IMG/VR virus record: IMGVR_UViG_3300042387_000948
Location: 124,001-188,000 of that record
Direction: 5' to 3' (one strand)
Length of the DNA: 64,000 nt
The notes under the pieces are model-generated. The model searched no databases. It was not told the origin of the DNA and saw only the letters and a list, made by a program, of their open reading frames with translations. Below, in pieces: positions 1-62,200 of this stretch (position 1 is the first letter of the stretch; every line of letters begins with the position of its first letter). Made by a program: the position numbers and the translations under genes.

Positions 1-352
1 GGTCTGAAATTTCATAATCATTCCACCACCAATGCGGTCCTTCTTGCACATAGTGTACTTTATGATTTCCTTTTTCTTTTATTCTCTGAACGATGGATTG
101 TTGTAATAATTCTGAAATTGGATTGACTCCGTTTACCAATCTACTCCCCTCCGAACTTAAAAAAGTTTTACCTTTTGGAAATATAATAAATACATGGTCA
201 TAGTTTGTTAGGTTTTTATCCACACCAAACAAATGAATGTTATAGTGGTCAGCATCTAAAGCGTGCATCCAAGCAAACTCCGTTCTCATATTTGGATGAT
301 TTTCTGGCACTTTACCAACAAAACCCATTTCAGTTAAGAATGCTATTCTCAT
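1..352 (-). CDS. Partial ORF running off the window start; probable glycosyltransferase-cluster protein
   Basis: Hand translation from ATG at 352 (MRIAFLTEMGFVGKVPENHPNMRTEFAWMHALDADH...) is open to position 1. ATGA overlap with the stop of the upstream GT2. Not in the ORF track. Confidence 0.7.
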   Translation of the reverse strand, partial: MRIAFLTEMGFVGKVPENHPNMRTEFAWMHALDADHYNIHLFGVDKNLTNYDHVFIIFPKGKTFLSSEGSRLVNGVNPISELLQQSIVQRIKEKGNHKVHYVQEGPHWWWNDYEISD

Positions 353-981
353 AGTGTATCGTAATATGCGTTTTGTTTTTCCTGTCTTTCAATTTCTTTG
401 GGATGATATAGACAGTAATCCTCTTCAGCGGGTAATACTGAAAGTGTGTTATACCCTTTGATTCTTTCGTGTACTTTACCATCCCACTCTATTTCCGATG
501 TTCTTCGATATAATCTAGTCTGATAATCTGGGAAATTTACCCAACCCTTTTCACTTACATTCCATCCCCATTTTTTAATATGTTTAGGAGTCAATCCACC
601 AACTGTATTAATACGTGGTACAAAGAAAAGGTCAACATCTTTATTATATTCCAATAAATCGTGTAAATTTTCTATCAAATATTCTGATGGTATTTCATCT
701 GCATCAATTTGGAAAATGAATATTCCGTTTGCATTATCTTTTAGATTGTTTTTAAAAGATGCAAAATCGTTGTTAAGTGGGTATGATATAACCCTAATGT
801 TTGTGTTATGTAATTGAGATATAATTAATAAATACTGCTTTACAGCATCGGTAACAGAATCCTCATCATATTGGATTAATATTTCATCATCCGTTTGTAT
901 TCTTGGATGTAGGAAATTTATTAATTTTGTAATTTCTTCTAACTCATTACAAACAGTAATAGCATAGGTAATATTTATCAT
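349..981 (-). CDS. Glycosyltransferase family 2 (GT-A fold)
   Basis: N-terminal ITYAITVCNE strand, DxD-like QIDADE, C-terminal LYHPK motif. Confidence 0.85.
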   Translation of the reverse strand: MINITYAITVCNELEEITKLINFLHPRIQTDDEILIQYDEDSVTDAVKQYLLIISQLHNTNIRVISYPLNNDFASFKNNLKDNANGIFIFQIDADEIPSEYLIENLHDLLEYNKDVDLFFVPRINTVGGLTPKHIKKWGWNVSEKGWVNFPDYQTRLYRRTSEIEWDGKVHERIKGYNTLSVLPAEEDYCLYHPKEIERQEKQNAYYDTL

Positions 982-999
982 AACTTATTTTGTATTTTA

Positions 1000-1031
1000 C
1001 AAAGATACGAATAATTTTTCAATTATCCAAA
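1000..1031 (-). promoter_or_regulatory. Bacteroidota-type primary sigma promoter
   Basis: Minus strand TTTGG-N19-TATCTTTG, 19 nt upstream of the GT2 ATG. Confidence 0.8.
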
Positions 1032-1086
1032 CATCTTTTGTTTTTTATATATGTATATATAAATATAAAGTTTTTGAATAAAACAT

Positions 1087-1120
1087 AAAAAAATGGGTAA
1101 CTTTTTTCAAAATTACCCAT
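1087..1120 (-). terminator. Intrinsic terminator after the GTS-repeat gene
   Basis: ATGGGTAA/TTACCCAT stem followed by a T-run on the minus strand. Confidence 0.65.
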
Positions 1121-1140
1121 CTTATTTTTCTTATGTTATT

Positions 1141-2166
1141 TTAGTAGAACGGATTCCAATCTAATCCATCATACACATACGGTTTTGGTGTTGGTGAACC
1201 ACTCATAATCAAACTACCAGTTACCGATGGAGTTGGTTTATTACCTACATATTGTGTTAATACTAAAATATTATTTATGTGTAAAGAACCTGATGCTTCT
1301 AAATAAAATACGTTAGGAGATATTACCGCACCACCTGCACCTTCTACATATGTAAAAACACCCCCATTAGTTGTACCGATTGTAGCAACAGACGTACCAG
1401 AACTACCAGAAGTACCGCTTGTACCAGATGTTCCACTTGTACCAGGTAATCCACTAGTTCCATTAAATCCAGATGAACCGGATGTACCATCCGAACCAAA
1501 CCCATTTGTACCATTTGTACCATTTAAACCAGATGTACCAGATGTACCATTACTACCAATACCATTAGTACCATTTGTTCCAGATGAACCGGATGTACCA
1601 GAAGTACCAGCTGCACCAAAAAATCCATTTATACCAGATGAACCTGAAGTTCCTGATGTACCAGTAGAACCAGTTCCACCAGTCACACCACTACTACCAG
1701 ATGTACCAGATGTACCAGATGTACCAGATGTACCAGTAGAACCAGTTCCACTTGTTCCAGAAGTTCCACTTGTTCCAGAAGTACCAGCTCCGCTTGTTCC
1801 AGAAGTTCCACTTGTTCCAGAAGTTCCAGAAGTTCCAAAGTTAGTACCATCTAATCCACTAGTACCACTTGTTCCAGACGTTCCTCGTGTACCACTACTT
1901 CCAGAAGAACCAGAAGTTCCAGAAGTTCCAGAAGTTCCAGAAGTACCGGCAGTACCAGAAGTTCCAGAAGTACCGGCAGTGCCAGCAGTACCCGTTGTAC
2001 CATTTGTTCCAGATGAACCGGATGTACCAGATGTACCGGATGTACCAGATGTTCCCCCAGTACCAGATGTACCAACTCCAATTAATCCATATAAGTAATC
2101 TAAGTTGTCATCCATTTCCAAAGCGGTCAATGGAGCACCTTTTTCTAATCTTTTAACTAATGCCAT
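1141..2166 (-). CDS. Gly-Thr-Ser repeat (collagen-like) virion protein, 341 aa
   Basis: About 230 aa of G-X-Y repeats between a short N-terminal domain (KRLEKGAPLTALEMDDNLDYL) and a C-terminal domain ending YVYDGLDWNPFY. Confidence 0.85.
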   Translation of the reverse strand: MALVKRLEKGAPLTALEMDDNLDYLYGLIGVGTSGTGGTSGTSGTSGTSGSSGTNGTTGTAGTAGTSGTSGTAGTSGTSGTSGTSGSSGSSGTRGTSGTSGTSGLDGTNFGTSGTSGTSGTSGTSGAGTSGTSGTSGTSGTGSTGTSGTSGTSGTSGSSGVTGGTGSTGTSGTSGSSGINGFFGAAGTSGTSGSSGTNGTNGIGSNGTSGTSGLNGTNGTNGFGSDGTSGSSGFNGTSGLPGTSGTSGTSGTSGSSGTSVATIGTTNGGVFTYVEGAGGAVISPNVFYLEASGSLHINNILVLTQYVGNKPTPSVTGSLIMSGSPTPKPYVYDGLDWNPFY

Positions 2167-2227
2167 ATTCTTATTCTATAAAAATCATTCTTATATGGAT
2201 AAATATAAACAAAAGGGAAATTACGGA

Positions 2228-2698
2228 TTATTTATTTAAATATTCCTTTAATGTATCTTTTTTAATTACAATTTCTGAAATTTGTTTTATACCATCCATA
2301 TTATATGTTCTATATATGTTTTTTCTTCCCATAATAGTTGAATTGCCATTTACATATTTACTGAATAAAGAACTACCATTTCTATCACTTCTAATCATAA
2401 TATCATCCAATCTTTTATTTTCATCTATTTTTTCGTTAGTCAAACTTTTTTGAAATAATTTTTTCAACCACATAAAAAATTTATCAGGTTGTATTTCGCT
2501 TATTTTCAAACATACTAATTTTTTATCGTATATTCCTGTTACAAAAACATAAGCTGTTTTTGGACCTGATAAAGATTTTGCTGTTCCGTCTGCATACTGA
2601 TAATAAACTATTTTATAGATATTTTTAGGTCTCAACAATATTTTTGATATTGGGTCTTCTTTTTCTATAAATGGTTTATATTGTAAGCTAAATGACAT
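2228..2698 (-). CDS. Hypothetical protein
   Basis: 156-aa ORF tightly packed in the minus-strand operon. Confidence 0.7.
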   Translation of the reverse strand: MSFSLQYKPFIEKEDPISKILLRPKNIYKIVYYQYADGTAKSLSGPKTAYVFVTGIYDKKLVCLKISEIQPDKFFMWLKKLFQKSLTNEKIDENKRLDDIMIRSDRNGSSLFSKYVNGNSTIMGRKNIYRTYNMDGIKQISEIVIKKDTLKEYLNK

Positions 2699-2699
2699 T

Positions 2700-3992
2700 T
2701 TACAATTTGTTTAGTTTAGGTATCTGCATTGGTGATTTATTCAATTTTGGAAGATTAAACGGTACAACCTTTGGAGCTGCTTTCACATTACCATCCATAA
2801 TTTGTGTAAACTTTTCATGCATTTTATCCAATGTAAAGTTTTTAAGAGTATTATCTTTCAAACCTTTGGATTTCTCTATATAAGTATCATATTTGTTAAA
2901 TACATCATAGATTTTATTTGCTGCCAAACTATAATTTACACTAAACCATTGTGATTCTTTCATACAAAATTGGTCAGCTGCTGATTCATGCACCTGTGTC
3001 AATGAACCTTCTAATAGAACTGCATTATCTTTTGGTAAAAAATCCACTTGTCCACTCCAACCACTTGCTAATATTGGCTTCCCTGTCAAAGTAAATTCAG
3101 CCATAGGTCTACCATATCCCTCGCCTTTAGCAAATGAAATCATTGCTTTAACTTTAGGGTGATGGTATAGATTTGCCATATCACTTTCTTCCATATCGCC
3201 ATGTAATAGATACACAGATGGACACTTATCACCCAATGGTTTTAATACCGCATCAATCTTTTCTCTTGTTGCTTCTCTATCGATAACAGAAAACCCAGCA
3301 TGCGATGTTTTAACAATAAGGCCTGGTCTTTTATCCTTTGGTAGATATTGAAACACTGTAGCGAATGTTTTAATTGCCATACCAATATCTTTTCTATCCT
3401 GTCCTAAATCTCCTTTTAACCAATGTCCTACAATTAGGAAGTTGAAATCCTCTTTTACATTTGCTAATACATCATTACCAGATGGATTTAAGAATACATC
3501 AACATCAACTCCTTCAAATAGAACTTCACAGGGTTTAGTTAATCTCGTCTCCCCAACAATCTGCTTTGTATTTTGGTCTTGATGCTGATAAACAGTACCA
3601 GCCATAACTTGCTTTGTAAACTCCGATGGAACTAATATTAAATCCATCTTATTCATACCATCAATAAAATCTTTTGGTGCTATTGTAGTTTCAACACCAG
3701 CGGTTACACCAATGTTATAGTTACCCTTTGGCTCAAATTCATTTGCTACTGAAACTTGGAAGAACACATCGGGTTTATCACCAATTTCACCAATAACTCT
3801 TTCTAACATCCATCTTCCAAATTCAGTTGATGGGTCTACTTGGTTTTGCGGAGTGTTACCCCAACGTAATGGTATAATTTTAATATCGTATTTATCCATT
3901 TTTCGTAGTGATTTCATTAAATCTCTACAATGGTCACCATATCCACTACGAGTGAATATAGGTCCTTGAAATACTAATGTAGGTTTGTTCAT
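2700..3992 (-). CDS. Glycosyltransferase, GT-B fold (GT4-like)
   Basis: TRSGYG N-terminal loop; C-terminal donor-binding KGEGYGRPMAEF and KPILASGWSGQVDF. Confidence 0.85.
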   Translation of the reverse strand: MNKPTLVFQGPIFTRSGYGDHCRDLMKSLRKMDKYDIKIIPLRWGNTPQNQVDPSTEFGRWMLERVIGEIGDKPDVFFQVSVANEFEPKGNYNIGVTAGVETTIAPKDFIDGMNKMDLILVPSEFTKQVMAGTVYQHQDQNTKQIVGETRLTKPCEVLFEGVDVDVFLNPSGNDVLANVKEDFNFLIVGHWLKGDLGQDRKDIGMAIKTFATVFQYLPKDKRPGLIVKTSHAGFSVIDREATREKIDAVLKPLGDKCPSVYLLHGDMEESDMANLYHHPKVKAMISFAKGEGYGRPMAEFTLTGKPILASGWSGQVDFLPKDNAVLLEGSLTQVHESAADQFCMKESQWFSVNYSLAANKIYDVFNKYDTYIEKSKGLKDNTLKNFTLDKMHEKFTQIMDGNVKAAPKVVPFNLPKLNKSPMQIPKLNKL

Positions 3993-3995
3993 AAC

Positions 3996-5381
3996 TTATT
4001 TAATTTTAAATACTTCAAATCTTTCTCTTGGTTTCCAATTTTCAAAGGTAGTTTCTATACCTTCTACTAATGTATCACACATATTTGTATGAGATAATCC
4101 CATATTTCCTAAAAACTCTTCTCTACCTCTTAAACCGGCAGCTTTTCTATCAGGTTTTGGTGTGTTATAAACTTTCTCAATTACTTCCGCAACTTCGTAG
4201 TTATCAACTCTATCATCCCAAATATATGGAGTTGGTACTGAACCAGCTAATGCCAATGCTCTACTCCAAATTGGATATGCCCACTCACCATGCTCTAACT
4301 TACCTTCCCACTCTCTCCATTGGTGTAATGAACCAATCTTAATGTAATCTTCGTGCGTTAGGTATTTACCATCTAACTTAAATCCACATTGGTCTTGCAA
4401 TCCACCAGTTACGTTTACAATGATTGGTGTTCCAGCTACTACCGATTCGGCAGTTGCTAATCCAAACCCTTCGTTGTTTGCTATGTTAATGGTGCAATCT
4501 GCAATGTTGTAAAGAAGATTGAGTTCTTCTACCGGCATTCTACTATCTGAAAATACTACATTATATTCAGATGCAATTGCATCAACTACTGCGGGTAAAT
4601 CAGTTCCGTTTTCATCCACAGGTTGTGTATGCATTAATAAACAAACTTTATCAGCTTTTTCTTTACCAATCTTATCACAAAATACCTTAAATGCATGGAT
4701 TACATCTGCTGGTTGTTTTCTTCTGATGTTACGATTTGACCAATATAAGATAAAATCATATTCTTTGCCTTTTAAGATTTTGTTACGGAATTCATCAGAT
4801 ACATCCGCAGGTTTGTAGATGTTTGAGTTAATACCATGTGGTACATAACCCACTTGCCAATCTGCTTTAGGTTTCCAAGTTGGTTTATCATCTAATGCAG
4901 ATAAACGTTTGATAATACCATAAGTTTGACGAGAGATACAACCAATCCAATCTGAACTTTCATAGAAGTTACGATTGTATAATGGGTCAGGTAAATCATC
5001 CCAAATTGCGTAGAATAAAAGTGGAACGTTTTGTCTAATTTCATGCTCTATATCATACAACCAAGTCCAATAGCGAGGGTCAGTAAAGTGTAGGATAGCA
5101 TCGGGTTGTTCGGTGTTAATCAGTTGGCGGATTAAATCTGCATTACCATAACCATTCCAAGGAAGAATCTTAACATTGGCATCTGCTACACCATAGTTTT
5201 TACGAATATCTTCACTTACATCTAATATTTTCCCAGCATCAGGGTGATTGATTGCGGCTCCTACCTGAAACCAATCGTATTTATCTACCGTTCCTAATAC
5301 TAACTCCTTTGACATTGTAGCAATACCACTTGCCATTCTCAAGTCATCTGATAGTAATAGAATTTTTTTCTTTTTTGCCAT
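3996..5381 (-). CDS. Glycosyltransferase, GT-B fold (GT4-like)
   Basis: ILLLSDD...SGIA N-terminus; NRNIRRKQP and NEGFGLATAESVVAGTPIIVNVTGGL motifs. Confidence 0.88.
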   Translation of the reverse strand: MAKKKKILLLSDDLRMASGIATMSKELVLGTVDKYDWFQVGAAINHPDAGKILDVSEDIRKNYGVADANVKILPWNGYGNADLIRQLINTEQPDAILHFTDPRYWTWLYDIEHEIRQNVPLLFYAIWDDLPDPLYNRNFYESSDWIGCISRQTYGIIKRLSALDDKPTWKPKADWQVGYVPHGINSNIYKPADVSDEFRNKILKGKEYDFILYWSNRNIRRKQPADVIHAFKVFCDKIGKEKADKVCLLMHTQPVDENGTDLPAVVDAIASEYNVVFSDSRMPVEELNLLYNIADCTINIANNEGFGLATAESVVAGTPIIVNVTGGLQDQCGFKLDGKYLTHEDYIKIGSLHQWREWEGKLEHGEWAYPIWSRALALAGSVPTPYIWDDRVDNYEVAEVIEKVYNTPKPDRKAAGLRGREEFLGNMGLSHTNMCDTLVEGIETTFENWKPRERFEVFKIK

Positions 5382-5384
5382 AAC

Positions 5385-5936
5385 TTATTGTATTGTAATT
5401 TGTATTTTTGTTTTTGTCCCATCGGGTTGTGAATAAACTGCGTATTGAGGTACACATTTTAATTCGGTTTTTACTTTGTTTAACATATCTACATATTTTT
5501 TACCATAGCCAGGTTTTAGATATGCAATAGTTAAATGTGGGTGGTAATCTGGATACGATGTTGTGTGTGGTAGTTTTTGCAATTCTGCATTTGTTTCGTG
5601 CAATGCAGGACCAGATACATCAAACTTTAGTACATCAAATTTTTCGTTTTCAAAAAGTGATGGATTGTATCCTTTGCATTCACCATATCCAAAATTACCC
5701 AATATACCCTTTACATCATCAACTGATACATCGTTGTGTAATCCATATAAAAATGTAGTGTGAGGTTCATCTTCAATACCATATCCACCATTAGTATCTT
5801 CTTCGTAAAGATGCTGTGGATTTATAGCATCCTGAATTTTGAATACTTCTGGTACTGAAAAATACAACATAGCACACCCATAATCATATGTACCTTTTGA
5901 TTCTTTGATTGAATTAAGTAACGTTTTTAATTTCAT
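5385..5936 (-). CDS. 2H phosphoesterase (2'-5' RNA ligase / Acb1-gp57B-like)
   Basis: Two HxT motifs: EPHTTFLYG and YHPHLTIAY. Confidence 0.8.
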   Translation of the reverse strand: MKLKTLLNSIKESKGTYDYGCAMLYFSVPEVFKIQDAINPQHLYEEDTNGGYGIEDEPHTTFLYGLHNDVSVDDVKGILGNFGYGECKGYNPSLFENEKFDVLKFDVSGPALHETNAELQKLPHTTSYPDYHPHLTIAYLKPGYGKKYVDMLNKVKTELKCVPQYAVYSQPDGTKTKIQITIQ

Positions 5937-5940
5937 AGTT

Positions 5941-6144
5941 TTAAAATTGTGAACCGCTTATTTGAAGTTGTAAGTACTCATTCATTTCGTTTCTGAAATC
6001 ATCATCTCTAACATATCTTTCCACAGTTCTATTAACTAGCTTTTGTAGTGTTACATCGGAATCAAATGATACTTTTTTGAAACTTGAATACACATCTTTC
6101 AAAATTTTTACGGTTGTCAGTTTTGTGTTTTCATTTTGACCCAT
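5941..6144 (-). CDS. Small DNA-binding protein (ribbon-helix-helix-like)
   Basis: 67 aa, beta strand (LTTVKI) followed by two helices. Confidence 0.5.
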   Translation of the reverse strand: MGQNENTKLTTVKILKDVYSSFKKVSFDSDVTLQKLVNRTVERYVRDDDFRNEMNEYLQLQISGSQF

Positions 6145-6210
6145 AGTTATTTCGTTTTATATATTTGTATATATAAATATAAACATTTTAAAAAAACGAA
6201 AAATTATGAA

Positions 6211-7077: not shown

Positions 7078-7124
7078 ATTTTTTATTTATATACAAAGAT
7101 ATGTAAAAATGTTGATAATTCCTA

Positions 7125-9497: not shown

Positions 9498-9804
9498 GTG
9501 TAAATAATTTTTGTTTTTGTTGCATTTCTCTACCTTTCTCTGTCATCTCTCTTGCAAATATCTTAAACACCTTCCCATCATTATGGGTAAATGTTATATT
9601 TGAATGTTCATTATTAGATATAGTGAATTGAACTTGTGGTTCATCATCACCCATATTTTCATCCGTCCATGCAAATACTTGTGGTTGGTTATCATCAAAT
9701 TGAAAACACCACTCACACTCTTCGTATTTATTTGGTTGTTTTATATTGATTGATTGTTTTGGAGAATATTCAATATCCTCAAATAACTCTAATTGTTTTC
9801 CCAT
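9481..9804 (-). CDS. Hypothetical protein
   Basis: 107-aa ORF in operon. Confidence 0.65.
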   Translation of the reverse strand: MGKQLELFEDIEYSPKQSINIKQPNKYEECEWCFQFDDNQPQVFAWTDENMGDDEPQVQFTISNNEHSNITFTHNDGKVFKIFAREMTEKGREMQQKQKLFTHESKN

Positions 9805-11941: not shown

Positions 11942-11973
11942 CAAAGATACAAATATTTTGTGAATATTCCAAC
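11942..11973 (-). promoter_or_regulatory. Bacteroidota-type promoter for the clamp operon
   Basis: GTTGG-N19-TATCTTTG on the minus strand. Confidence 0.65.
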
Positions 11974-18582: not shown

Positions 18583-18614
18583 CAAAGTTACAAAATTAAT
18601 TTGATATTTCCAAA
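18583..18614 (-). promoter_or_regulatory. Bacteroidota-type promoter
   Basis: TTTGG-N19-TAACTTTG, overlapping the 3' end of Mom copy B. Confidence 0.75.
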
Positions 18615-27338: not shown

Positions 27339-27450
27339 CAAAGATACGAAGAATATTTGATAATACCAAATGTTTTTTTAAACTTTTTTTTATGCAGATA
27401 TTTTTCATATAATTGTAACAAAGATACTAATAATTTGTTACAAATCCAAA
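27339..27450 (-). promoter_or_regulatory. Tandem Bacteroidota-type promoters driving the SSB-RecA-helicase operon
   Basis: Two TTTGG-N19-TATCTTTG sites, at 27339-27370 and 27419-27450. Confidence 0.85.
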
Positions 27451-34980: not shown

Positions 34981-35012
34981 CAAAGATACAAAAAAAATCC
35001 CACAATTCCAAA
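34981..35012 (-). promoter_or_regulatory. Bacteroidota-type promoter for the polA-like gene
   Basis: TTTGG-N19-TATCTTTG, 4 nt before the ATG. Confidence 0.8.
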
Positions 35013-50471: not shown

Positions 50472-53400
50472 TTACTTACCCAATAATGCCTTTAATTCAT
50501 TTATTTGTTGTTGTTGTTCTTTTATTGCCTCAATTAGTAATGCCGTTATTCTTCCATAAGATACCGAATCTGCTTCTCCAGATTTTGTAAAGTTAATAAT
50601 TTCAGGAACAATATCTGCAACTTCTTCCGCAATTACACCAATTTCAGTATCATCCGAACCTTTTCTATTGTAAGTTACACCTCTTAATAATAATACTTTA
50701 TCCAATGATTTATTTAAACTAACTACATTTTCTTTATATCTAATAGATGATGTTTCTGTCAATGATATACAATTCAGTACATTTAAGTTTGTTGTACCAT
50801 CCGGGTCACAATAATACCCACTATTATTTGAATCATAAATTATAGTTGACCAGAATACACCTGAACTTTCGTTCAAGCCATACATTGCTATTTTATACCA
50901 AGCACGTTTTGTATTCCAATAAGATGTATGCCATAAACCTTGAATAGGTCCACCAACTATTTGGATACCATATCCGTTATTATACCCAGCTACATAGTGA
51001 TGGGCCTGAACACCTACATAGTGAGATGTATCACCAGGAGAGTTTGGAATACCACCCCAAGTATCAATAAATCCAGACCCCCAACCAAATGCAGAAATAA
51101 AATCGGTTGTACCCCAACCCATTGTACCTACCCAATAGTTAGAATCTCCAGTATAATCGTTTCTTCTAAAGTTACCTTTGGCTGTCAAACCAATTCTCAT
51201 TTTAGAGTAATCATCAGTTCCTTGCCATCTAGTAGTACCATTTCCATCAAAATAGAATCCGGTATCACTTCTGTCATAAAATATAGCTGAGCGAATATCT
51301 CCCGTATTAATGTATGAACCATCGTTTACGGTTAATGGTACGTTAAAGTAAAAATTAGGTCTATCAGTGTACATGTGTGCATGTCCACTATTCGCAGGTC
51401 CAAACCAAATATATCCATCATTTGTTCTAAATCTAACTCCCCATGTACTTTCCCCATCAAATCTACCAGTATTAGTTGATGTACCAAATCTTAGTTGATT
51501 AAATATAGATGTAGATAACGGGTCTGCGTAATATCCAGTATTATCTCTATCATAAAATATTGGTGCTCTCATCGAATCTCTAGCAAACATATTACCAGAA
51601 GTATCTATACCACCAACCGTTTGACCTGCAGCTTCCGAATAAAAATGGAAAGATTCAGTTCCCACTAATTGCGATGTTACTCTTTTACCAACATACCAAC
51701 CACTACCACTACCACCATTATAACGAACCATAGCTTCGTATCCATTTCCTGGATTGATATAAAGGTATTTGTTTGATGCACCGGTAATAGTTAAATCCCA
51801 AAGAACAGATGTTGAACGAGGGTCTGTATAATAACCGGTATCGTTACTATCGTAGAATATTGGTGCTCTTAATGAGTTACCACCCGTTGCGTAATTGTTA
51901 AATAATACAGTATTGTTTGGATACAACTCCATATTAGTAACTCTAGTACCAGATGTGTTAGTATTGTAGAAATATATATCCCCAGATGAAGCGAATCTCA
52001 TATAACCTTGTCCAAACGAAGTATTTAGTCTACCAAATCCAGAAGGAGAACCACCATCGTTTGTTACGTTATATCCAAATCCAGCTCCTTCCCAACTTAC
52101 ATTAGGTTCAGAACACCACATTTGCAGTTGTACAATACCAGTACCATTTCCATTATTTGCAGCAGGTAATCTATTAATTATTTGAGAAGTAGCATGTGCT
52201 CCACTATTTCTTATACCACCAAATAATTCGGTAAATGTTGCAGGGTCTACATAATAAGCAGTATTTGCCGAATCATAAAACGCAGTTGCATATAATCCAG
52301 TAGCGTTCCAATATCCTAATTCAGCTCTATTATAACGATAGAAATGTAATGCTCCTCCAGCTGCACCAGCTTCAGTTTTTCTGCCACCAATACCAGCATA
52401 TTCTCTAATTGTTCCACCACTATCTTTTAGTTGGAAATGTAAATTAGAACCTACTGATGTTGCTGAGTTATTGTGATTTGTTCTTGTTAAATGTAATGTA
52501 CCATATGTACCATCATCACTAAATGAAGTTCCACCTTTTCTCATATCAAACGCAACAGGTGTCGAATTTGATGTGTGCTCTAATATTACTTCATTTGCAT
52601 TACTAAAGTTTATTGCATTACCAGCGTTTGTTAAATTTAATGTAGCAAATGTTGGAGAATCGGTTGTTTGAATATTTTGATTCATTAAATGAACTTCAGT
52701 TGCACCAGGACCTGTGTTAATATTACCAGCTATTGTTAGTGTAGTACCATCAAATGTAAGATTACTTTCAACTGTTGCGTTTGGTGCAGTTCCGTTTAAT
52801 GTAATTACACCATTATCGGTTGTACCGGTTAAAGCAAGTACTCCAGACGTACCAGATGTACCAGCGCCAGATGTTCCAGACGTACCAGATGTACCAGCAC
52901 CAGATGTACCACTACTTCCAGATGAACCAGATGCGCCGGATGAACCAGATGCGCCGGATGCACCAGAAGTACCACTACTTCCACTACTTCCAGAAGAACC
53001 AGATGCGCCGGATGCACCACTACTACCACTTGTACCACGTGTACCAGACGTACCTGATGTGCCTGAAGTACCACTTGTACCAGAAGTTCCGGATGAACCA
53101 GAAGTTCCGGATGAACCAGAAGTACCACCAGAACCAGAAGTACCAGCTGCGGCTAACCAAGCTGAACCATTATATCGATATATGTTTGTATCTGAAGTAT
53201 TGTAATATATTTGTCCAGCTTTTGTACCAACAGGATTTGTTGCGAATGCTGGAATTCTCAATGAACCACTTATATCCACCGAACCAGTAAATTCTTGTGT
53301 ATCATTTGTTGCATCACCAAATTTATTTGAACCAGATGAGTAAATTAAAGATGATGAAATAAATTGTACTAATATTTGTTGTGCTCGGATTGTACCACCA

Positions 53401-56400
53401 ACAGTTAAGTTACCACTAAGGGTTTCGTTTCCAGTAATAGTAGAATTACCCACTAAAGTTTGAGTTCCAATAACATTTAAGTTTTGAACTCTAGTACTAC
53501 CACTTACATCTAATGCAAATGTTGTTGATGGGTTTTGATTTATACCTAAACTACCAGTAATTATTGTATGTGCGGTTGATATTACAGTATTTCTACCACC
53601 AATAATATCAACTTTCTTTAAATTAGTATTATTTAATAAAGATGTTGGTTGGGTTGCTTGTGCAGTTAGTGTTGTAACTGAACTACCTCTTGTCAAATAT
53701 ACATTAAAAGTTCCGGCAGCACTAGTACAAGCCTGCACAAACACCCATATTTCAGGATTAGTTGCACTTGCAGTATCACCTACTATAAAACTATTTATAG
53801 TTGTATTATTTAATCTACTATATGGATGTACAATTATATCAGTTCCCTGATTATATGCCCCCACTATAAAAGTCACTTCACCACCATATCCATTATTATC
53901 CCAACTACTTTCAATATAAGTTGATAATGTTTGTTGACCATAAGTTGTGTATGAATTATGTATTCTTATATAAGCAGCGGGGTCTCCGGGATTTCTAACT
54001 AATGTTAATTTTGTATTATAAACATTACCACCTCTAATGTACTCACCAGTTATACCTCTGATTATTGTTACATCATTTCGTAATCTAGTAGAACCACTAA
54101 CATCTAATGTAAATCCACCATTTACAGTTGAACCAACGGTTAAGTTACCACTAATGGTTTCGTTTCCAGTTACCGCAAGAGTTGTACCATTAAATGTTAA
54201 GTTTGCCTCAACACTTGCGTTTGGAGCAGTTCCGTTTAATGTAATTACACCATTATCAGTTGTACCTGTCAATGAAAGTAAACCAGAAGAACCAGAAGAA
54301 CCAGATGTACCGCTTGTACCGCTTGTTCCAGATGAACCACTACTTCCAGAAGAACCACTACTACCGCTTGTTCCGGAAGTACCTCGTGTCCCAGATGTTC
54401 CGGATGTTCCAGAAGTACCGCTTGTTCCAGAAGTTCCAGAAGTACCGCTTGTTCCACTAGCACCAGTTGCTCCAGAAGAACCACTACTTCCAGAAGAACC
54501 ACTACTTCCAGATGAACCACTACTACCGCTTGTTCCAGAAGTACCTCGTGTCCCAGATGTTCCAGAAGTTCCAGATGTACCGCTTGTACCACCAGTACCA
54601 GCAGTTCCCATTGTACCACTTGAACCAGATGTTCCAGAAGTACCAGATGTTCCACTTGTGCCGGAAGTACCACTACTACCGCTTGTTCCAGAAGTACCAC
54701 TTGTACCCCCACTACCAGATGTTCCGGCTGCTGCTAACCAAGTTGTACCATTGTATCGATATATGTTTGTATCAGCTGTGTTATAATATATTTGTCCAGC
54801 TTTTGTTCCCGTTGGGTTTGATGGATATGCTGGAATTCTTAATGAACCACTAATATCTACCGAACCAGTGAATTCTTGTGTATCATTTGTTGCATCACCA
54901 AATTTGTTACTCCCACTTGCGTATATTAATGATGATGAAATATATTGTACTAATATTTGTTGTGCTCTGATTGTACCACCAACCGTTAAGTTGCCACTAA
55001 GGGTTTCATTTCCAGTTACCGTTAAAGTAGTACCATCGAATCTAAGATTAGCCTCCGCAGTTACGTTTGGAGATGCACCATTAAGAGTAATTACACCATT
55101 ATCGGTTGTACCACTTATAGATAATGCTCCAGAAGTACCAGATGTTCCGCTTGTACCGCTAGTACCAGATGTACCACTTGTACCCGAAGAACCTCCACTA
55201 CCAGCAGTTCCGTTTGTTCCACTTGAACCCGATGAACCACTACTTCCGCTTGAACCACTACTACCAGATGTTCCGCTTGAACCAGATGTTCCAGATGAAC
55301 CTCCACTTCCTGCAGTTCCGTTTGTTCCAGAAGAACCAGAAGAACCAGATGAACCAGATGTTCCGCTTGTTCCACTTGTTCCGCGTGTACCAGATGTACC
55401 ACTTGTTCCAGATGTTCCAGAAGAACCCCCACTACCAGCAGTTCCACTACCACCACCAGCTCCAGTTACACCACTACTACCACTCGTTCCAGATGTTCCA
55501 GATGTTCCACTTGAACCAGTAGTTCCAGAAGAACCACTACTACCTGATGAACCCGAAGTACCTACAGTTCCAGAAGAACCAGAAGTACCTGATGTACCCG
55601 AAGTACCAGCAGTTCCCGAAGAACCACTACTACCAGATGAACCACTACTACCAGATGAACCACCAGCTCCAGTTATACCACTTGTACCGGAAGTACCAGA
55701 TGTTCCACTTGTACCAGATGTTCCAGAAGTTGCGGATGTACCACTCGTTCCAGAAGAGCCAGTTGTACCAGATGAACCAGTTGTTCCACCACTACCAGAT
55801 GTACCAGATGAACCAGTAGTACCACTACTACCACTTGAACCAGAAGTTCCAGAAGTACCTCCACTACCAGATGTACCAGAAGAACCAGATGAACCAGATG
55901 AACCAGATGAACCAGATGTACCACCACTACCAGCAGTTCCTCTTGTACCACTACTACCGCTTGTTCCAGAAGTACCAGAAGTACCAGAAGTTCCGCTTGT
56001 TCCAGAAGAACCCCCACTACCAGATGTACCACCACTACCAGACGAACCATCCGTACCAGATGAACCAGATGAACCAGATGAACCACCACTACCGCTTGTA
56101 CCACCACTACCGCTTGTACCAGATGAACCACCACTACCGCTTGTTCCAGATGTTCCAGAAGTACCAGAAGTACCAGATGATGCAGCTGCAGTTCTTCTAC
56201 CAACCACACCAGTAGTTGTATTAAGTACTAAGAATTCTTGCGTTGTATTATCGGTAGTTACATTGGTATTATCAAATCTAACACTACCAGAAACTGCTAA
56301 ACTACCACTTATACCTAACGAACCTGTTATTTCTTGTTTATCGTTACTTGCATCACCAAATTTGTTTGAACCAGATGAAAAAATAATTGATGATGATATA

Positions 56401-57200
56401 TAAGTTACTTTTAATTCAGTTGCGTTTATTGTACCACCAACACTTAAATTTCCAGTTATTGTTTCATTACCAGTGATGGTTTGATTTCCAATCACACTTG
56501 AATTACCCACTAAAGTTTGAGAACCAGTTATTCTTAGTGCACCAGATATAAAAGTTGAACCACTTATATCAAATTGAGTTGTTGGTGTTTTTCTTATACC
56601 AACATTTCCACCACCATTTGCTAAAATTACATTAGATGTTGATGCCCTATTAAGATATAAATCTACATTTGTTGAATCTATTCTACCATTAGATGGTGTA
56701 ATTGCAATTGTTCTACCATTAGTAGTTGCGGTTATTGAAATTGAAGTATCGGGTGCGTTTACATTAATACCACCACTAACTATGTTTAAATTTCCACCAT
56801 TTATGTTTTCACTACCACTAATATTTAATGAACCACTTATCGTTGTATTTGTATTTACAACTAATCCTAAATTTGGTGAAATTACTGCTTGTGCTGAACC
56901 TGATTTAATTCTATCCAAATCACCAATTGAAGATGCATTGATATTCGTTAAACCACTACCATTTCCTGTAAATAATGATGCCGATACTGAACCACTAAAT
57001 TGTGAATTTGCATTTATTTGTAATGTTGCTCCGTTTGGAGTCCCAATTTGATAAGTTTGTACGGCCGAACCACTTAGTTTACCAACAACACTTACCGATT
57101 CTGAAGTAGCAGTTAAAATAGATGAACCACTTACAAAAAGTGATACACTATTTACACTATTTTGATTTAACCCATTGGGACTTTTACCGTTGAACTCCAT
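50472..57200 (-). CDS. Giant tail fibre (2242 aa) with GTS repeats and a C-terminal intramolecular chaperone (peptidase S74-like)
   Basis: [10 protein letters not shown] cleavage motif, [31 protein letters not shown] coiled coil. Confidence 0.9.
52845..56180 (-). repeat. Gly-X-Y (GTS/GSS) repeat blocks within the 2242-aa fibre
   Basis: Three blocks at about 55130-56180, 54290-54730 and 52845-53150. Confidence 0.9.
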
Positions 57201-59287: not shown

Positions 59288-62200
59288 TTAATTCATGTTT
59301 AATCCGGTCACAAATCCATAATAAGATGAGCCCCCATCAAATGTGTAAAATACTAATATATCCTCACCAGATGAAGTTAAAATTGGAGGTGTACCACCTA
59401 CCCAATTTACACCACTCCAAGCTAATGAATGTGCTCCTGCGTTTACTGCTAATAATGTAAATCCAAATGCTTTTCCAGCAGGTGCATTTGAGAATGATAT
59501 TGAACCATTTCCAGTAAAAGTTCTCTTAAAGTTGTTAGCAGTTGATAAATCAATTGATGCACCACTACCACTTCCTAAATCAGAGAAAGTTTCTCTGAAA
59601 GTTGTTGATGTTGTAAATCCAGTTGTAGATAAACTAGTTGATAGATTTACACCATTTGTTGCAATTATGTTTAAAGATGTGGGTGAAGTCAAATTAGGAG
59701 TTCCACCGGTATAAATGTTAAATGCTGATGCGGATACGGGTCCAGTTGCTTGAATTGTACCAGTTACAGTTAATGTACTACCATCAAAAGTTAAATTACT
59801 TTCAACCCGTCCATTTGGTGCAGTACCATCTAATGTGATAACACCATTATCAGTAGTTCCTGTCAATGCTAAGAAACCACTTAAACCAGACGAACCAGAT
59901 GTTCCAGCTCCAGATGTACCCGATGTTCCAGAAGTTCCAGATGAACCAAAATTTGTTCCATCTAATCCAGATGAACCAGAAGTTCCAGATGTACCATTTG
60001 TACCTTCACCAGATGTTCCAGACGTTCCAGACGTTCCTGATGTACCACTACTACCAAATAAAGTTCCATCTAAACCAGATGTACCAGACGTTCCCGATGT
60101 ACCATCTGTTCCAGTTGAACCAGATGTACCAGACGTTCCTGATGTACCACTTGTACCAGACGAACCAAAGAATGTTCCATCTAAACCAGAAGTCCCAGAA
60201 GTTCCAGAAGTTCCAGATGTGCCATCTGTCCCAGATGTACCCGAAGTACCACTTGTTCCAGATGTTCCAGACGAACCAAAATATGTACCATCTAAACCAG
60301 ATGTGCCAGAAGTTCCAGATGTGCCAGAAGTTCCATCAGTAGCATCAATTCCAGATGTTCCAGATGTACCACTTGTTCCAGAAGTTCCAAAGAAAGTTCC
60401 GTCTTGTCCACTTGTACCAGATGTACCCGATGTACCAGAAGTTCCATTGGTAGCATCTAAACCAGATGTTCCAGATGTACCAGATGTACCATTTGTTCCA
60501 AAAAAAGTTCCATCTTGTCCACTTGTACCAGATGTACCACTCGTTCCGCTTGTACCATCGGTCCCAACACCAGATGAACCAGAAGTTCCGCTTGTACCAG
60601 ATGAACCAAAGAATGTACCATCTACACCACTTGTACCAGATGTACCACTTTCGCCACTTGTACCAGATGAACCGCTTTCTCCACTTGTACCAGATGAACC
60701 GCTTTCTCCACTTGTACCAGATGAGCCAAAGAATGTTCCATTTAAACCAGAAGTACCGCTTGTACCAGATATACCATCAGTACCACTAACACCAGATGAA
60801 CCAGAAGTACCGCTTTCTCCACTTGTACCAGATGAACCAAAGAATGTTCCATCTAAACCAGAAGTACCGCTTGTACCCGATGTACCAGAAGTTCCATCAG
60901 TCCCAGAAATACCGTTTGTACCACTTTCTCCACTTGTCCCACTTGTTCCAGATGAGCCAAACAATGTTCCATCTAAACCAGAAGTACCAGAAGTCCCAGA
61001 AGTTCCAGATGTACCATCGGTCCCAGATGTACCAGAAGTTCCATCAGTACCAGAAGTTCCATCAGTACCGCTAGTACCAGATGTACCACTTTCACCACTT
61101 GTTCCGCTTGTTCCAGATGTACCACTTGTGCCTGAAGTACCAGATGTACCACTTGTGCCTGAAGTACCAGATGAACCAAATAAAGTTCCATCTAATCCAC
61201 TTGTTCCAGATGTACCAGATGTTCCATCGGTACCCGAAGTACCAGAAGTTCCATCAATACCGCTTGTACCAGATGTACCTGATATACCTGAAGTACCGCT
61301 TGTACCCGAAGTACCAGATGTTCCATCAGTTCCAGAAGTTCCGCTTGTTCCAGAACTACCATCACTACCACTTGTACCAGATGTTCCGCTTGTACCAGAT
61401 GAACCTTCAGCCGATGTACCACTACTACCACTTGTACCAGATGTTCCATCACTACCACTTGTACCATTTGTACCACTTGTCCCACTTGTACCATCACTTC
61501 CAGAAGTTCCGCTTGTTCCGCTTGTTCCAGAAGTACCACTTGTACCTGATGTACCATCAGTTCCGCTTGTACCCGATGTACCATCAGTTCCGCTTGTACC
61601 CGATGTACCATCGATTCCCGAAGTTCCAGAAGTTCCGCTTGTACCAGATGAACCGCTTGTACCAGATGTACCATCAGTTCCGCTTGTACCAGATGTACCA
61701 TCCGTACCGCTTGTACCAGATGTACCGCTTGTACCAGATGTACCATCAGTCCCAACACCAGAAGTTCCAGATGAACCGGAAGTACCATCAGTTCCAGAAG
61801 TTCCACTTGTCCCATCTGTTCCAGAAGTACCGCTTGTACCAGATGTACCATCCGAACCAGTTGTACCACTACTTCCGCTTGTACCAGATGTACCATCAGT
61901 TCCGCTTGTACCAGAAGTACCGCTTGTACCAGATGTACCGCTTGTACCAGATGTACCATCCGAACCAGTTGTACCACTACTACCAGAAGTACCGCTTGTT
62001 CCATCGGTTCCTGAAGTACCAGAAGTACCGCTTGTACCGCTTGTACCAGATGTACCGCTTGTACCAGATGTACCGCTTGTACCAGAAGTACCGCTTGTAC
62101 CAGAAGTACCATTTAACCCAGAAGTTCCCGATGTACCACTTGTTCCGCTTGTTCCACTTATACCACTTGTTCCAGAAGTACCAGAAGTTCCAGAAGTACC

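What the first reader, a model, noticed from the sequence alone, without database searches (positions are those of the whole stretch)
1..5381. Glycosyltransferase cluster wrapped around a Ser/Thr-saturated Gly-X-Y protein: candidate phage-encoded virion O-glycosylation system
Seen: one GT2, two GT-B/GT4 genes and a further partial ORF surround a 341-aa (GTS)n protein. The same repeat, and its GLDGTNFG motif, recurs in two giant fibres at 50-64 kb, giving well over a thousand Ser/Thr acceptors in this window. Known: giant eukaryotic viruses glycosylate their fibrils with their own GTs, and Thr glycosylation can stabilise Pro-poor collagen. Inference: these GTs decorate the GTS fibres to form a mucin-like coat for stability, shielding or adhesion. 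I know of no characterised system like this in a tailed phage.
Basis: partly seen in the sequence, partly recalled or inferred. Interest (0 to 1): 0.78.

Follow-up and report, generated by a model that had tools for sequence, protein, structure and literature searches.

The report
Phage glycan island embedding collagen fibre
A freshwater T4-like phage carries a roughly 21-kb block of sugar-building genes into which a gene for a short serine/threonine-rich collagen-like fibre has been inserted; the enzymes plausibly sugar-coat virion proteins late in infection, but nothing found here ties them specifically to that fibre.

Summary
The four glycosyltransferase (GT) genes at 1-5381 are the start of a ~21-kb island of 25 genes: about 11 GTs, nucleotide-sugar enzymes, and methyl- and acetyltransferases. 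None has a membrane segment.

The 341-aa (GTS)n gene is a separate cassette with its own late-type promoter and terminator. It lies next to a gp2-like gene, and both are hypervariable.

The conserved core (PD-(D/E)XK nuclease, p67, GT4, GT-B, small protein, GT2) recurs in about 95 other phage loci with no collagen gene. One is Flavobacterium phage immuto, which has no Gly-X-Y protein at all. So the GTs do not depend on GTS proteins.

Virion-protein O-glycosylation is still the best reading:
- Late-type promoters drive the GT operons.
- The nearest solved relatives of the GT2 are protein GTs (GmaR, SunS).
- There is no export machinery.
- Published nucleoside analysis of immuto DNA shows no sugar-modified base.

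A new lead: relatives, including Mel-JY01, encode TibC-like protein heptosyltransferases beside (GTS)n collagen genes.

Verdict: a new variant of a known kind. The acceptor is unproven, and host-surface remodelling remains a live rival.

The parts
2..352 (-). First 117 codons of a 330-aa GT4-like (GT-B) glycosyltransferase. The rest lies beyond the window start.
   Evidence: Full gene seen on the source contig. ESM Atlas feature score 0.97-1.00 to GT1/GT4 clusters. No Pfam hit.
349..981 (-). GT2 (GT-A) glycosyltransferase of 210 aa. It is the first gene of a tightly packed 21-gene operon and the candidate priming protein O-glycosyltransferase.
   Evidence: PF00535 above cut-off. The D93-A-D95 motif is invariant in 8 homologues. 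A family profile finds GmaR as best PDB match (3.9e-8, full length), then SunS and ThuS.
1000..1066 (-). Tandem promoter-like sites before the GT2 operon. A late-type site (ATATTTATATATACA) lies at 1066-1052. A Bacteroidota-type -7 box (TATCTTTG) lies at 1007-1000.
   Evidence: The strict late-type motif has 7 sense-strand hits, all in the 4.4% of intergenic DNA, and none on the antisense strand.
1090..1123 (-). Intrinsic-terminator-like hairpin followed by a T run, directly after the collagen gene.
1141..2166 (-). Collagen-like mini-fibre of 341 aa. It has a conserved 31-aa N-terminus, about 230 aa of (GTS)n Gly-X-Y repeats, and a variable C-terminal knob of about 80 aa.
   Evidence: Pfam Collagen 1.9e-25 and PHROG tail-fibre families. 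Composition. Length ranges from 247 to 961 aa and the C-terminus is swapped among relatives.
2190..2206 (-). Late-type promoter-like site (ATATTTAT-CC-ATATAAG) 40 nt before the collagen start codon.
   Evidence: It is conserved as ATATTTAC-N3-TATAA upstream of the collagen gene in diverged relatives.
2228..2698 (-). 156-aa protein, probably a T4 gp2-like DNA-end protector. It is hypervariable and is not a GT.
   Evidence: AlphaFold model has pLDDT 75. BFVD matches to Gp2 / DNA end protector proteins have probability 0.98-0.99 and TM 0.37-0.49. The Atlas gives a weak Gp2 lead. Identity among relatives is 36-51% where flanking genes are 75-90%.
2700..3992 (-). GT-B glycosyltransferase of 430 aa.
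   Evidence: PHROG 2170 at 5.6e-13 over the full length. E291-X7-E299 is invariant. It shares 27% identity with the GT4 domain that is fused to the TibC-like domain in Mel-JY01.
3996..5381 (-). GT4 glycosyltransferase of 461 aa.
   Evidence: PF00534 and PF20706 above cut-off. Best PDB match is chlorovirus B736L at 5.6e-10. E304-X7-E312 is invariant.
5385..5936 (-). 2H-phosphoesterase / Acb1-like protein of 183 aa. It is a strain-specific insertion and not part of the glycan machinery.
   Evidence: Weak Pfam hits and PHROG 755. It is present only in loci identical to the window.
5941..6180 (-). p67 (67 aa, conserved partner of the module) together with the late-type promoter-like site at 6180-6166. 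That site heads the unit p67, 2H, GT461, GT430, gp2-like.
50472..57200 (-). Giant fibre of 2242 aa with four (GTS/GSS)n collagen blocks and a C-terminal S74 chaperone domain.
   Evidence: Pfam Collagen 4e-54 and Peptidase_S74. Composition.
59288..64000 (-). C-terminal part of a 3322-aa fibre. It holds about 339 Gly-X-Y triplets, mostly GTS.

Best explanation
The window opens inside a ~21-kb glycan island of a ~190-kb freshwater T4-like phage whose host is probably a member of the Bacteroidota.

What the island encodes (shown):
- About 11 soluble GTs: 4 GT2, about 5 GT4/GT-B, 1 GT11 and a possible GT-D.
- Sugar-nucleotide enzymes: a WecB-type 2-epimerase, GDP-fucose synthase plus two further SDR enzymes, a heptose-7-phosphate-kinase-like PfkB protein, and an aminotransferase fragment.
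- Two FkbM methyltransferases and two acetyltransferases.

Most likely mechanism (inferred):
1. A strain-variable oligosaccharide is built in the cytoplasm late in infection.
2. It is attached O-linked to Ser/Thr of virion surface proteins.
3. The small GmaR/SgtA-like GT2 (349-981) primes the acceptor, and the GT4, GT11 and methyltransferase enzymes extend and cap the glycan.
4. The (GTS)n mini-fibre and the giant (GTS)n fibres are the most obvious acceptors, but not necessarily the only ones.

The 341-aa gene itself is a late, separately transcribed, hypervariable fibre cassette. It was inserted beside a gp2-like gene in this clade only.
For: - Extent and content of the island.
- No predicted membrane segment in any island protein of the window's own contig, so no Wzx, Wzy or phosphoglycosyl transferase.
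- Transcription: a bipartite late-type motif that also precedes sheath, tube, baseplate and DUF7936 genes heads three units. These are p67-GT461-GT430-gp2, the collagen gene, and (together with a host-type box) the 21-gene GT2 operon. All 7 strict hits are intergenic.
- The GT2 family profile matches the flagellin O-GlcNAc transferase GmaR at 3.9e-8 over its full length, and the peptide glycosyltransferases SunS and ThuS.
- GT461's best solved relative is the chlorovirus GT B736L.
- In a motif-based scan of 185,579 species genomes, the GT461 family turned up only on MAG-binned contigs that carry the same phage module.
- Precedent: in C. difficile the GT2-type gene sgtA lies next to bclA3, and SgtA puts O-GlcNAc on Thr/Ser of the collagen repeats (PMC7157674).
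- In the nearest isolate, Mel-JY01, a GT4 + sugar O-methyltransferase + TibC-like protein (PDB 4rap, 1e-69; catalytic Asp and all four Fe-finger Cys kept) lies between (GTS)n collagen genes.
- 19 of 30 TibC-like lineages in IMG/VR have a Ser/Thr-rich collagen ORF within 10 kb, against 0 of 174 control loci.
- The island carries a heptose-7-phosphate-kinase-like gene.
Against: - No glycan has been observed. Everything rests on sequence.
- The core GT module occurs without a collagen gene in 80 + 14 loci and in L071. Phage immuto has it with no Gly-X-Y protein at all. The collagen fibres therefore cannot be its obligate acceptor.
- A gp2-like gene is embedded in the same way, so adjacency is weak evidence.
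- No TibC-like gene was found in the ~118 kb of this phage that could be read.
- GT2 and GT4 similarities say little about the acceptor.
- The enzyme set (WecB, Fcl, GT11, WcaF-like acetyltransferase) would equally suit a cell-surface polysaccharide.
- The promoter classes are inferred from motifs, not from transcripts.
Confidence: 0.4

Rival explanations
1. Host-envelope remodelling. The island is an auxiliary metabolic block whose soluble GTs add sugars to the host's own lipid-linked LPS, capsule or S-layer glycan intermediates during infection, for example to block superinfection or to stop progeny sticking to debris. The host would supply the carrier lipid, flippase and ligase. On this reading the collagen gene is an unrelated fibre cassette.
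For: - The enzyme repertoire is typical of O-antigen and exopolysaccharide loci: WecB above cut-off, GDP-fucose synthase, GT11, WcaF-like acetyltransferase, FkbM methyltransferases.
- The distal half differs between near-identical strains, as O-antigen loci do (L003 versus L004).
- Similar clusters in cyanomyoviruses are read this way in the literature (PMC12801897).
- The GT module is independent of collagen genes.
- A weak PAP2-like gene lies at 32292-32936.
Against: - No membrane or export component is encoded.
- Late-type promoters precede the GT units, which leaves little time to rebuild a cell surface in a lytic cycle.
- The GT461 family was not seen in isolate bacterial genomes, though that scan has limited sensitivity.
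- The GT2's nearest solved relatives act on proteins or peptides.
Confidence: 0.3
2. Virion glycosylation that does not involve the collagen-like proteins. The GTs decorate the capsid, tail or other Ser/Thr-rich structural proteins, as in mycobacteriophages. The (GTS)n proteins remain bare, and the gene was inserted at this spot by chance.
For: - The core module is conserved in phages without collagen genes.
- immuto has other Ser/Thr-rich structural proteins.
- The collagen gene is an insertion with its own promoter and terminator and is absent in L071.
- Mycobacteriophage glycans sit on capsid and tail-tube C-termini (PMC12619734).
Against: - Over 1000 exposed Ser/Thr residues in Pro-poor triple helices would be hard for a promiscuous Ser/Thr GT to avoid.
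- The SgtA-BclA3 precedent.
- The association of TibC-like GTs with (GTS)n genes in relatives.
Confidence: 0.15
3. DNA hypermodification. The GTs glycosylate modified bases of phage DNA to evade restriction, as in T-even phages.
For: - Phage GT-B and GT-A enzymes do this in T4 and in many metagenomic phages (Pyle 2024, as cited in PMC12619734).
- GT461 also hits Pfam 'GT4-conflict'.
- The module always follows a PD-(D/E)XK nuclease.
Against: - Published LC-MS of immuto DNA, which carries the same core module, found only dA, dC, dT and fdPreQ1 (PMC10516641).
- No dCMP or dUMP hydroxymethylase and no TET/JBP-like gene was found in the 64-kb window, which contains the replication genes. Two Mom-like genes already provide a DNA modification.
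- About 11 GTs plus fucose, heptose and methyl chemistry is far more than any known DNA glycan needs.
- The promoters are late-type, whereas T4's DNA GTs are early genes.
Confidence: 0.04

Closest known systems
Clostridioides difficile SgtA-BclA3 (and Bacillus BclA) exosporium collagen-like glycoproteins
   Same: A GT2/WcaA-type soluble GT gene lies directly beside a collagen-like gene. In that system the Ser/Thr residues of the Gly-X-Y repeats are the O-GlcNAc acceptors (PMC7157674). As here, the collagen protein has an anchoring N-terminus and a C-terminal knob.
   Different: SgtA carries TPR repeats, whereas the 210-aa phage GT2 has none. The known system is bacterial spore surface, not a virion. 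Here the GT2 is the first of 21 operon genes, and the pairing is found in one phage clade only. No biochemistry exists for the phage system.
Mycobacteriophage virion O-glycosylation (Freeman et al. 2023, Cell Host Microbe; known here only through citing papers)
   Same: Tailed-phage GTs modify the phage's own structural proteins with O-glycans. Weak similarity (23-28% over 120-145 aa) links GT430 to GTs of Arthrobacter phages, which are actinobacteriophages.
   Different: Those systems use two to four GTs and target C-terminal tails of capsid and tail-tube subunits. Here the island is ~21 kb with its own sugar-nucleotide synthesis, and the candidate acceptors are collagen-like fibres.
Giant-virus glycosylation machinery (chlorovirus A064R/B736L sets, Mimivirus fibril clusters, Mimivirus L230 acting on collagen-like L71)
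   Same: The virus itself encodes the GTs, the sugar-nucleotide enzymes and the sugar methyltransferases, and these work in the cytoplasm on virion proteins. B736L is the best solved match of GT461. A viral collagen-like protein with a viral GT is known (PMC9614988).
   Different: L230 glucosylates hydroxylysine, not Ser/Thr. The hosts are eukaryotes. No lysyl hydroxylase is present here. Similarity to B736L covers only the C-terminal GT-B domain.
TibC/AAH bacterial autotransporter heptosyltransferases (BAHT)
   Same: In Mel-JY01, and in more than 340 IMG/VR contigs, a full-length TibC-like domain is present, keeping the catalytic Asp and the four-Cys iron finger. It is often next to Ser/Thr-rich collagen genes. 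The window's island has a heptose-7-phosphate-kinase-like gene.
   Different: No TibC-like gene was found in the parts of this phage that could be read. Known BAHT enzymes act on beta-helical adhesins, not on collagen repeats. The position matching Arg-286 is not conserved in the Mel-JY01 alignment.
Listeria GmaR flagellin O-GlcNAc transferase; SunS/ThuS peptide S-glycosyltransferases
   Same: These are the best solved relatives of the GT2 family at 349-981. They are soluble GT-A enzymes that glycosylate proteins or peptides directly from nucleotide sugars.
   Different: Identity is low. GT2 is a very large family and acceptor specificity cannot be read from this match. There is no antirepressor domain.
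LPS-like GT clusters of T4-like cyanophages (P-SSM2, S-SCSM1, S-SCSM2R)
   Same: Large GT and epimerase clusters (up to 13 GTs) occur in T4-like aquatic phages (PMC12801897).
   Different: Those are assumed, without tests, to modify the host surface or DNA. No embedded collagen gene has been reported for them.

Membership tests
GT2 (GT-A fold) glycosyltransferases | Match to the family profile above the curated cut-off | tested here: met
   PF00535 at 35.4 bits against a cut-off of 23.3 for 349-981.
GT2 (GT-A fold) glycosyltransferases | D-x-D metal and nucleotide-sugar binding motif | tested here: met
   D93-A94-D95 is invariant in 8 homologues down to 40% identity.
GT4 (GT-B fold, retaining) glycosyltransferases | Profile match above cut-off and an E-x7-E motif | tested here: met
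   GT461: PF00534 at 34.4 bits (cut-off 26.4), with E304 and E312 invariant. GT430: no Pfam hit, but PHROG 2170 at 5.6e-13 and E291/E299 invariant.
Bacterial/viral collagen-like proteins | Long uninterrupted Gly-X-Y runs | tested here: met
   Runs of 26, 21, 11, 6 and 6 triplets in the 341-aa protein; Pfam Collagen 1.9e-25.
Bacterial/viral collagen-like proteins | Formation of a stable triple helix | not testable with these tools
   Proline is only 1-3%. Stability without Pro or Hyp is exactly what glycosylation might supply, but this needs circular dichroism or melting experiments.
SgtA-BclA3-type collagen O-glycosylation pair | GT2-type GT gene directly adjacent to the collagen-like gene | tested here: met
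   The GT2 starts 160 bp downstream of the collagen gene. The adjacency is kept in 23 of 24 spanning contigs of this clade. It is absent in all other lineages that carry the module.
SgtA-BclA3-type collagen O-glycosylation pair | TPR protein-binding domain on the GT | tested here: not met
   The protein is 210 aa with only the GT2 domain.
SgtA-BclA3-type collagen O-glycosylation pair | Sugar found on Ser/Thr of the repeats | not testable with these tools
   Needs mass spectrometry of virions or of co-expressed proteins.
BAHT (TibC/AAH) protein heptosyltransferases | A TibC-like gene in this phage | tested here: not met
   tblastn over the window and source-contig loci covering record ~3.8-122 kb of a ~190-kb genome found only a GT4-domain match. 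The rest of the genome could not be read.
BAHT (TibC/AAH) protein heptosyltransferases | In relatives: catalytic Asp-110, sugar-binding Thr-226, Lys-230 and Trp-305, and iron-finger Cys-339, 342, 358 and 370 | tested here: met
   All are aligned and conserved in the Mel-JY01 domain and in the consensus of 103 phage homologues. Residue list from PMC4358343. The position matching Arg-286 is Ile in the alignment.
T4-type DNA glucosylation | Hydroxymethyl-pyrimidine synthesis gene (dCMP/dUMP hydroxymethylase or TET/JBP) | tested here: not met
   None among the window's ORFs scanned with Pfam and PHROGs. Only about 60% of the genome was seen.
T4-type DNA glucosylation | Glycosylated nucleosides in the DNA of a phage carrying the module | tested here: not met
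   Published LC-MS of immuto DNA found dA, dC, dT and fdPreQ1 only (PMC10516641). This is indirect, because it is another phage.
Wzx/Wzy- or ABC-dependent polysaccharide loci | Initiating phosphoglycosyl transferase, flippase or polymerase, or an ABC transporter | tested here: not met
   No hydrophobic segment in any island protein of the window's own contig. One weak segment occurs in a variant-strain (L004) enzyme. No such Pfam families were found.
T4 gp2 DNA-end protector (for the 156-aa protein) | Fold similarity to Gp2 proteins | tested here: inconclusive
   BFVD matches to Gp2 / DNA end protector have probability 0.98-0.99 but TM only 0.37-0.49 and E about 0.02. The Atlas lead scores 0.77. 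No sequence-family hit.
GT-D fold glycosyltransferases (for the 258-aa island protein) | Profile or fold match to GT-D (DUF1792) | tested here: inconclusive
   Atlas feature scores of 0.93-0.95 with 213-223 shared features to GT-D and GT-D-like clusters. No Pfam or PDB sequence match. The structure model was too poor to use, at pLDDT 50.

The most novel reading that the evidence does not exclude
Large aquatic tailed phages O-glycosylate their proline-poor, Ser/Thr-saturated collagen-like fibres with protein glycosyltransferases they encode themselves. In this phage the enzyme would be a GmaR/SgtA-like GT2 backed by a strain-variable glycan island. In Mel-JY01 and many other phages it would be a TibC-like heptosyltransferase. 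The result would be a mucin-like, hypervariable sugar coat on the fibres, in the manner of the BclA nap on spores, that stabilises the triple helix and shapes adsorption or shielding.
Probability: 0.33. Interest if true: 0.8.

Novelty: new variant of a known kind. Interest (0 to 1): 0.55.

Why it matters
If the island does glycosylate virion proteins, it would extend phage virion glycosylation well beyond its current examples. So far it has been shown only for small GT sets in actinobacteriophages. This would be an abundant group of freshwater and marine T4-like phages that carry their own sugar-nucleotide synthesis, on the scale seen in giant viruses.

The strain-to-strain swapping of the distal GT genes, and of the fibre's knob, would then mark two linked layers of surface variation in natural phage populations.

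The association of TibC-like protein heptosyltransferases with (GTS)n collagen genes was found here in passing. It gives a concrete test using two genes and one substrate: does Ser/Thr glycosylation explain how Pro-poor viral collagens fold?

If instead the island remodels the host surface, it is a further example of a known, and still untested, idea about auxiliary genes.

Tried and rejected
- Nucleotide search of 1-6000 against isolated phages found no match.
- The 156-aa protein has no detectable homology to immuto's 152-aa protein in the same position, by BLASTP or hhalign.
- It shows no excess covariation with the collagen protein: Spearman 0.19-0.32, the same as with flanking genes. The idea that it is a dedicated fibre chaperone was dropped in favour of a gp2-like protein.
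The question is unresolved.
- The cytidylyltransferase-like giant gene next to the TibC-like GTs was tested as a possible ADP-heptose synthase. It looks like an NMN adenylyltransferase instead, so the idea was rejected.
- GT-D assignment of the 258-aa protein: a search with the family alignment returned only unnamed close relatives, there was no PDB or Pfam match, and the model had pLDDT 50. It remains a lead only.
- PDB fold search of the 156-aa model gave nothing significant.
- The collagen N-terminal anchor motif was not found in the collagen proteins next to TibC-like genes.

Full report
**What the window is.** All genes lie on the - strand. The window carries T4-type replication and tail genes:
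- family-B DNA polymerase, clamp and clamp loader, UvsX, helicase and ribonucleotide reductase;
- tail sheath, tail tube and a baseplate protein.

The nearest isolates are distant. Microcystis phage Mel-JY01 shares 50.7% polymerase identity. Flavobacterium phage immuto shares the GT genes at 42-46%. There is no nucleotide-level match to any isolated phage.

The source contig was found (JGI 3300042361, Ga0453953_0000002, 279,674 bp). A 189,822-bp contig from another sample breaks inside the island. This suggests a genome of about 190 kb (inference).

**The observation.** The reported genes are present at the stated coordinates:
- GT2 (349-981);
- a 341-aa collagen-like protein with 40 GTS triplets (1141-2166);
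- a GT-B protein (2700-3992);
- a GT4 protein (3996-5381);
- the start of a further GT4-like gene (2-352).

The catalytic motifs are invariant across homologues. These are D-x-D in the GT2 and E-x7-E in both GT-B proteins.

Four corrections apply:
1. A 156-aa gene that is not a GT also lies inside the cluster.
2. The exact GLDGTNFG motif occurs in one giant fibre only.
3. That fibre is really 3322 aa and runs off the window end.
4. The cluster is truncated by the window start.

**True extent of the island.** On the source contig the island continues for about 17 kb beyond the window. In order, the genes are:
- a GT4-like protein of 330 aa;
- a GT2;
- a WecB-type UDP-GlcNAc 2-epimerase (above the NCBIfam cut-off);
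- a 258-aa protein with an Atlas-only GT-D lead;
- a GNAT acetyltransferase and an aminotransferase fragment;
- a WcaF-like acetyltransferase;
- a GT4, a GT11, and an FkbM methyltransferase;
- a GT1_2, and a second FkbM methyltransferase;
- GDP-fucose synthase (5.9e-85) and two more SDR enzymes;
- a 134-aa protein;
- a PfkB protein whose best match by far is heptose-7-phosphate kinase (3.8e-39, below cut-off);
- a 410-aa GT2 and a 286-aa protein.

None of these proteins has a predicted membrane segment. The 21 genes from the GT2 to the 286-aa protein overlap or are less than 35 nt apart, and have no internal intergenic promoter motif. In a near-identical strain the distal genes are replaced by different ones (L004).

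**Transcription signals.** Two motif classes stand out in upstream regions.

*Class A (ATATTTAY, 1-4 nt, TATA[T/A/C]A).*
- It has 7 strict sense-strand hits. All 7 lie in the 4.4% of DNA that is intergenic, and none lies on the antisense strand.
- Six of the seven lie 29-36 nt before a start codon. The seventh lies 85 nt before the GT2.
- It precedes baseplate and DUF7936 genes. In relaxed form it precedes the sheath and tube genes.
- I read it as the late promoter (inference). Its 3' half resembles the T4 late box TATAAATA, which I cite from my own knowledge.

*Class B (TATCTTTG).*
- It fits the Bacteroidota -7 box TAnnTTTG (my own knowledge).
- It precedes the clamp, SSB and PD-(D/E)XK genes, so it is an early, host-type signal.
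- This promoter type points to a Bacteroidota host. So do two other facts: immuto infects a Flavobacterium, and the closest MAG-binned hits are labelled Bacteroidetes and Flavobacteriaceae.

*How the island is driven.*
- Class A heads the unit p67, 2H, GT461, GT430, 156-aa gene.
- The collagen gene has its own class-A-like site. This site is conserved in diverged relatives. The gene also has its own terminator.
- The 21-gene operon has class A and class B sites in tandem.

**The collagen gene is an inserted, hypervariable cassette.**
- Among 80 IMG/VR relatives (GT461 82-100% identical), 23 of 24 contigs that span the site carry a collagen gene there.
- Its length ranges from 247 to 961 aa.
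- The 31-aa N-terminus is conserved (mean pairwise identity 0.66). The C-terminal part is not (mean 0.39).
- One contig (L071) has no collagen gene.
- The segment after the collagen repeats resembles the segment that follows each collagen block of the giant fibres. The protein is therefore a mini-fibre paralogue.
- The neighbouring 156-aa protein is equally variable (mean 0.44, against 0.85 and 0.79 for the flanking GTs). Its model (pLDDT 75) matches Gp2 / DNA-end-protector proteins. It shows no special covariation with the collagen protein.

**The GT core does not need collagen proteins.** The order PD-(D/E)XK nuclease, p67, GT4, GT-B, small protein, GT2 is kept in:
- immuto and 79 relatives;
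- 13 of 14 long MAG-binned contigs at 40-59% identity;
- Mel-JY01, without the small protein.

None of these loci has a collagen ORF within 10 kb. The complete immuto genome has no Gly-X-Y run longer than six triplets. Mel-JY01 does have (GTS/GSS)n proteins, but elsewhere in its genome.

**What the GTs most likely act on.**

*DNA is unlikely.*
- Published nucleoside LC-MS of immuto DNA shows only dA, dC, dT and fdPreQ1 (PMC10516641).
- The window has two Mom-like genes but no hydroxymethylase.
- The GT units carry late-type promoters.

*A lipid-linked polysaccharide pathway is not encoded.* No such components are present. Use of host machinery cannot be excluded.

*Pointers toward proteins.*
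- The GT2 family profile matches GmaR, the flagellin O-GlcNAc transferase, over its full length (3.9e-8). It also matches SunS and ThuS.
- GT461's best solved relative is chlorovirus B736L.
- SgtA, a GT2-type enzyme encoded next to bclA3, O-GlcNAcylates Thr/Ser in collagen repeats (PMC7157674).

I therefore favour late, cytoplasmic O-glycosylation of virion proteins, with the (GTS)n fibres as likely but not exclusive acceptors. My confidence is 0.4. Host-surface remodelling is second at 0.3.

**A lead found on the way.** In Mel-JY01 a 1226-aa protein lies between (GTS)n collagen genes. It combines three parts:
- a GT4 domain, 27% identical to GT430;
- a MycE/TylF-like sugar O-methyltransferase;
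- a full TibC-like domain (PDB 4rap, 1e-69). The catalytic Asp, three sugar-binding residues and all four iron-finger cysteines are conserved.

TibC is a protein-serine heptosyltransferase (PMC4358343).

IMG/VR holds at least 347 relatives of this domain.
- 33 of the 80 best loci carry a collagen-like ORF whose X and Y positions are mostly 60-99% Ser/Thr, with almost no Pro.
- After clustering at 75% identity, 19 of 30 lineages have such an ORF in the locus, and 10 have it within 3 kb.
- Three control sets totalling 174 loci have none. These controls are lineage-limited.

Freshwater relatives of the window's phage carry the genes split as GT4-methyltransferase plus TibC-like, next to the terminase gene. 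I could not show that the window's own phage has one. I found no paper on this association.

**Placement against what is known.** Virus-encoded glycosylation of virion proteins is established in chloroviruses and mimiviruses (PMC9614988) and in mycobacteriophages (cited in PMC12619734). Large GT clusters in T4-like cyanophages have been described (PMC12801897). The window's island is a new variant in three respects: its size, its own sugar-nucleotide supply, and the embedded late fibre cassette. It is not a new kind of system. The reasons are that the specific coupling is not supported and that precedents exist. The collagen-glycosylation idea remains testable and would be notable if true.

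Noticed in passing
window 35027-35406 (-): A full-length tmRNA gene lies in a 481-nt intergenic gap of the phage. ARAGORN predicts a tag peptide ending in YAVAA, and Rfam RF00023 scores 99.6 bits against a gathering score of 47.
   Followed up: partly
window 17473-18273 and 18596-19369 (-): Two paralogous Mom-family DNA-modification genes (Pfam Mom, 1e-43 and 6e-44) lie next to two unannotated genes of 595 and 370 aa, beside the DNA polymerase gene.
   Followed up: no
window 9804-11018 (-): A 404-aa phage protein matches DruA of the Druantia defence system (Pfam PF14236, 1.5e-20).
   Followed up: no
window 5385-5936 (-): A 2H-phosphoesterase with weak Acb1 (anti-CBASS) similarity sits directly upstream of GT461. 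It is present only in contigs identical to the window and absent from relatives at 98% identity or less, so it is a recent insertion.
   Followed up: partly
window 1000-1007, 7094-7101, 11942-11949, 27339-27346, 27419-27426, 34981-34988 (-): TATCTTTG boxes, fitting the Bacteroidota sigma-A -7 element TAnnTTTG, lie before early genes. This suggests a Bacteroidota host for this uncultured phage.
   Followed up: partly
L003 versus L004, from about locus position 16100 onward (source-contig record about 88 kb): Two otherwise identical strains carry different distal island genes. One has GT11, methyltransferases and GT1_2. The other has two unknown genes, a HAD-phosphatase/nucleotidyltransferase fusion and another methyltransferase. 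Assemblies also break at this point.
   Followed up: partly
L091 4750-8430 (Mel-JY01), and L178-L335: TibC-like protein heptosyltransferase domains are widespread in phage contigs and frequently lie next to Ser/Thr-rich collagen-like genes. In Mel-JY01 the domain is fused to a GT4 and a sugar O-methyltransferase.
   Followed up: yes
L091 2-3049 (Mel-JY01 record 2-3049): An open frame of at least 1016 aa with 202 Gly-X-Y triplets is not annotated in the GenBank record. The record instead lists a '-' strand hypothetical protein (739-2298) that looks like the antisense shadow of the repeats. The frame probably continues across the record's ends.
   Followed up: partly
L415 11099-17531 (source-contig record about 103-109 kb): Downstream of the island lie a 764-aa protein, a 422-aa S74-chaperone fibre, a 228-aa protein with a Legionella collagen-like C-terminal domain (Lcl_C), a subtilase and an APS kinase.
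   Followed up: no
L176 1-9038 (source-contig record about 3.6-12.8 kb): A further giant gene of 3067 aa precedes the 3322-aa fibre. Together with the 2242-aa fibre this gives three giant genes in a row, only two of them partly or wholly inside the window.
   Followed up: no
window 32292-32936 (-): A 214-aa protein has a weak PAP2 (phosphatidic-acid / undecaprenyl-pyrophosphate phosphatase superfamily) match, below the Pfam cut-off.
   Followed up: no
L093 4571-5170 (Mel-JY01): A 2OG-Fe(II) oxygenase is annotated as prolyl 4-hydroxylase in a phage that has collagen-like proteins. No counterpart was seen in the window.
   Followed up: no
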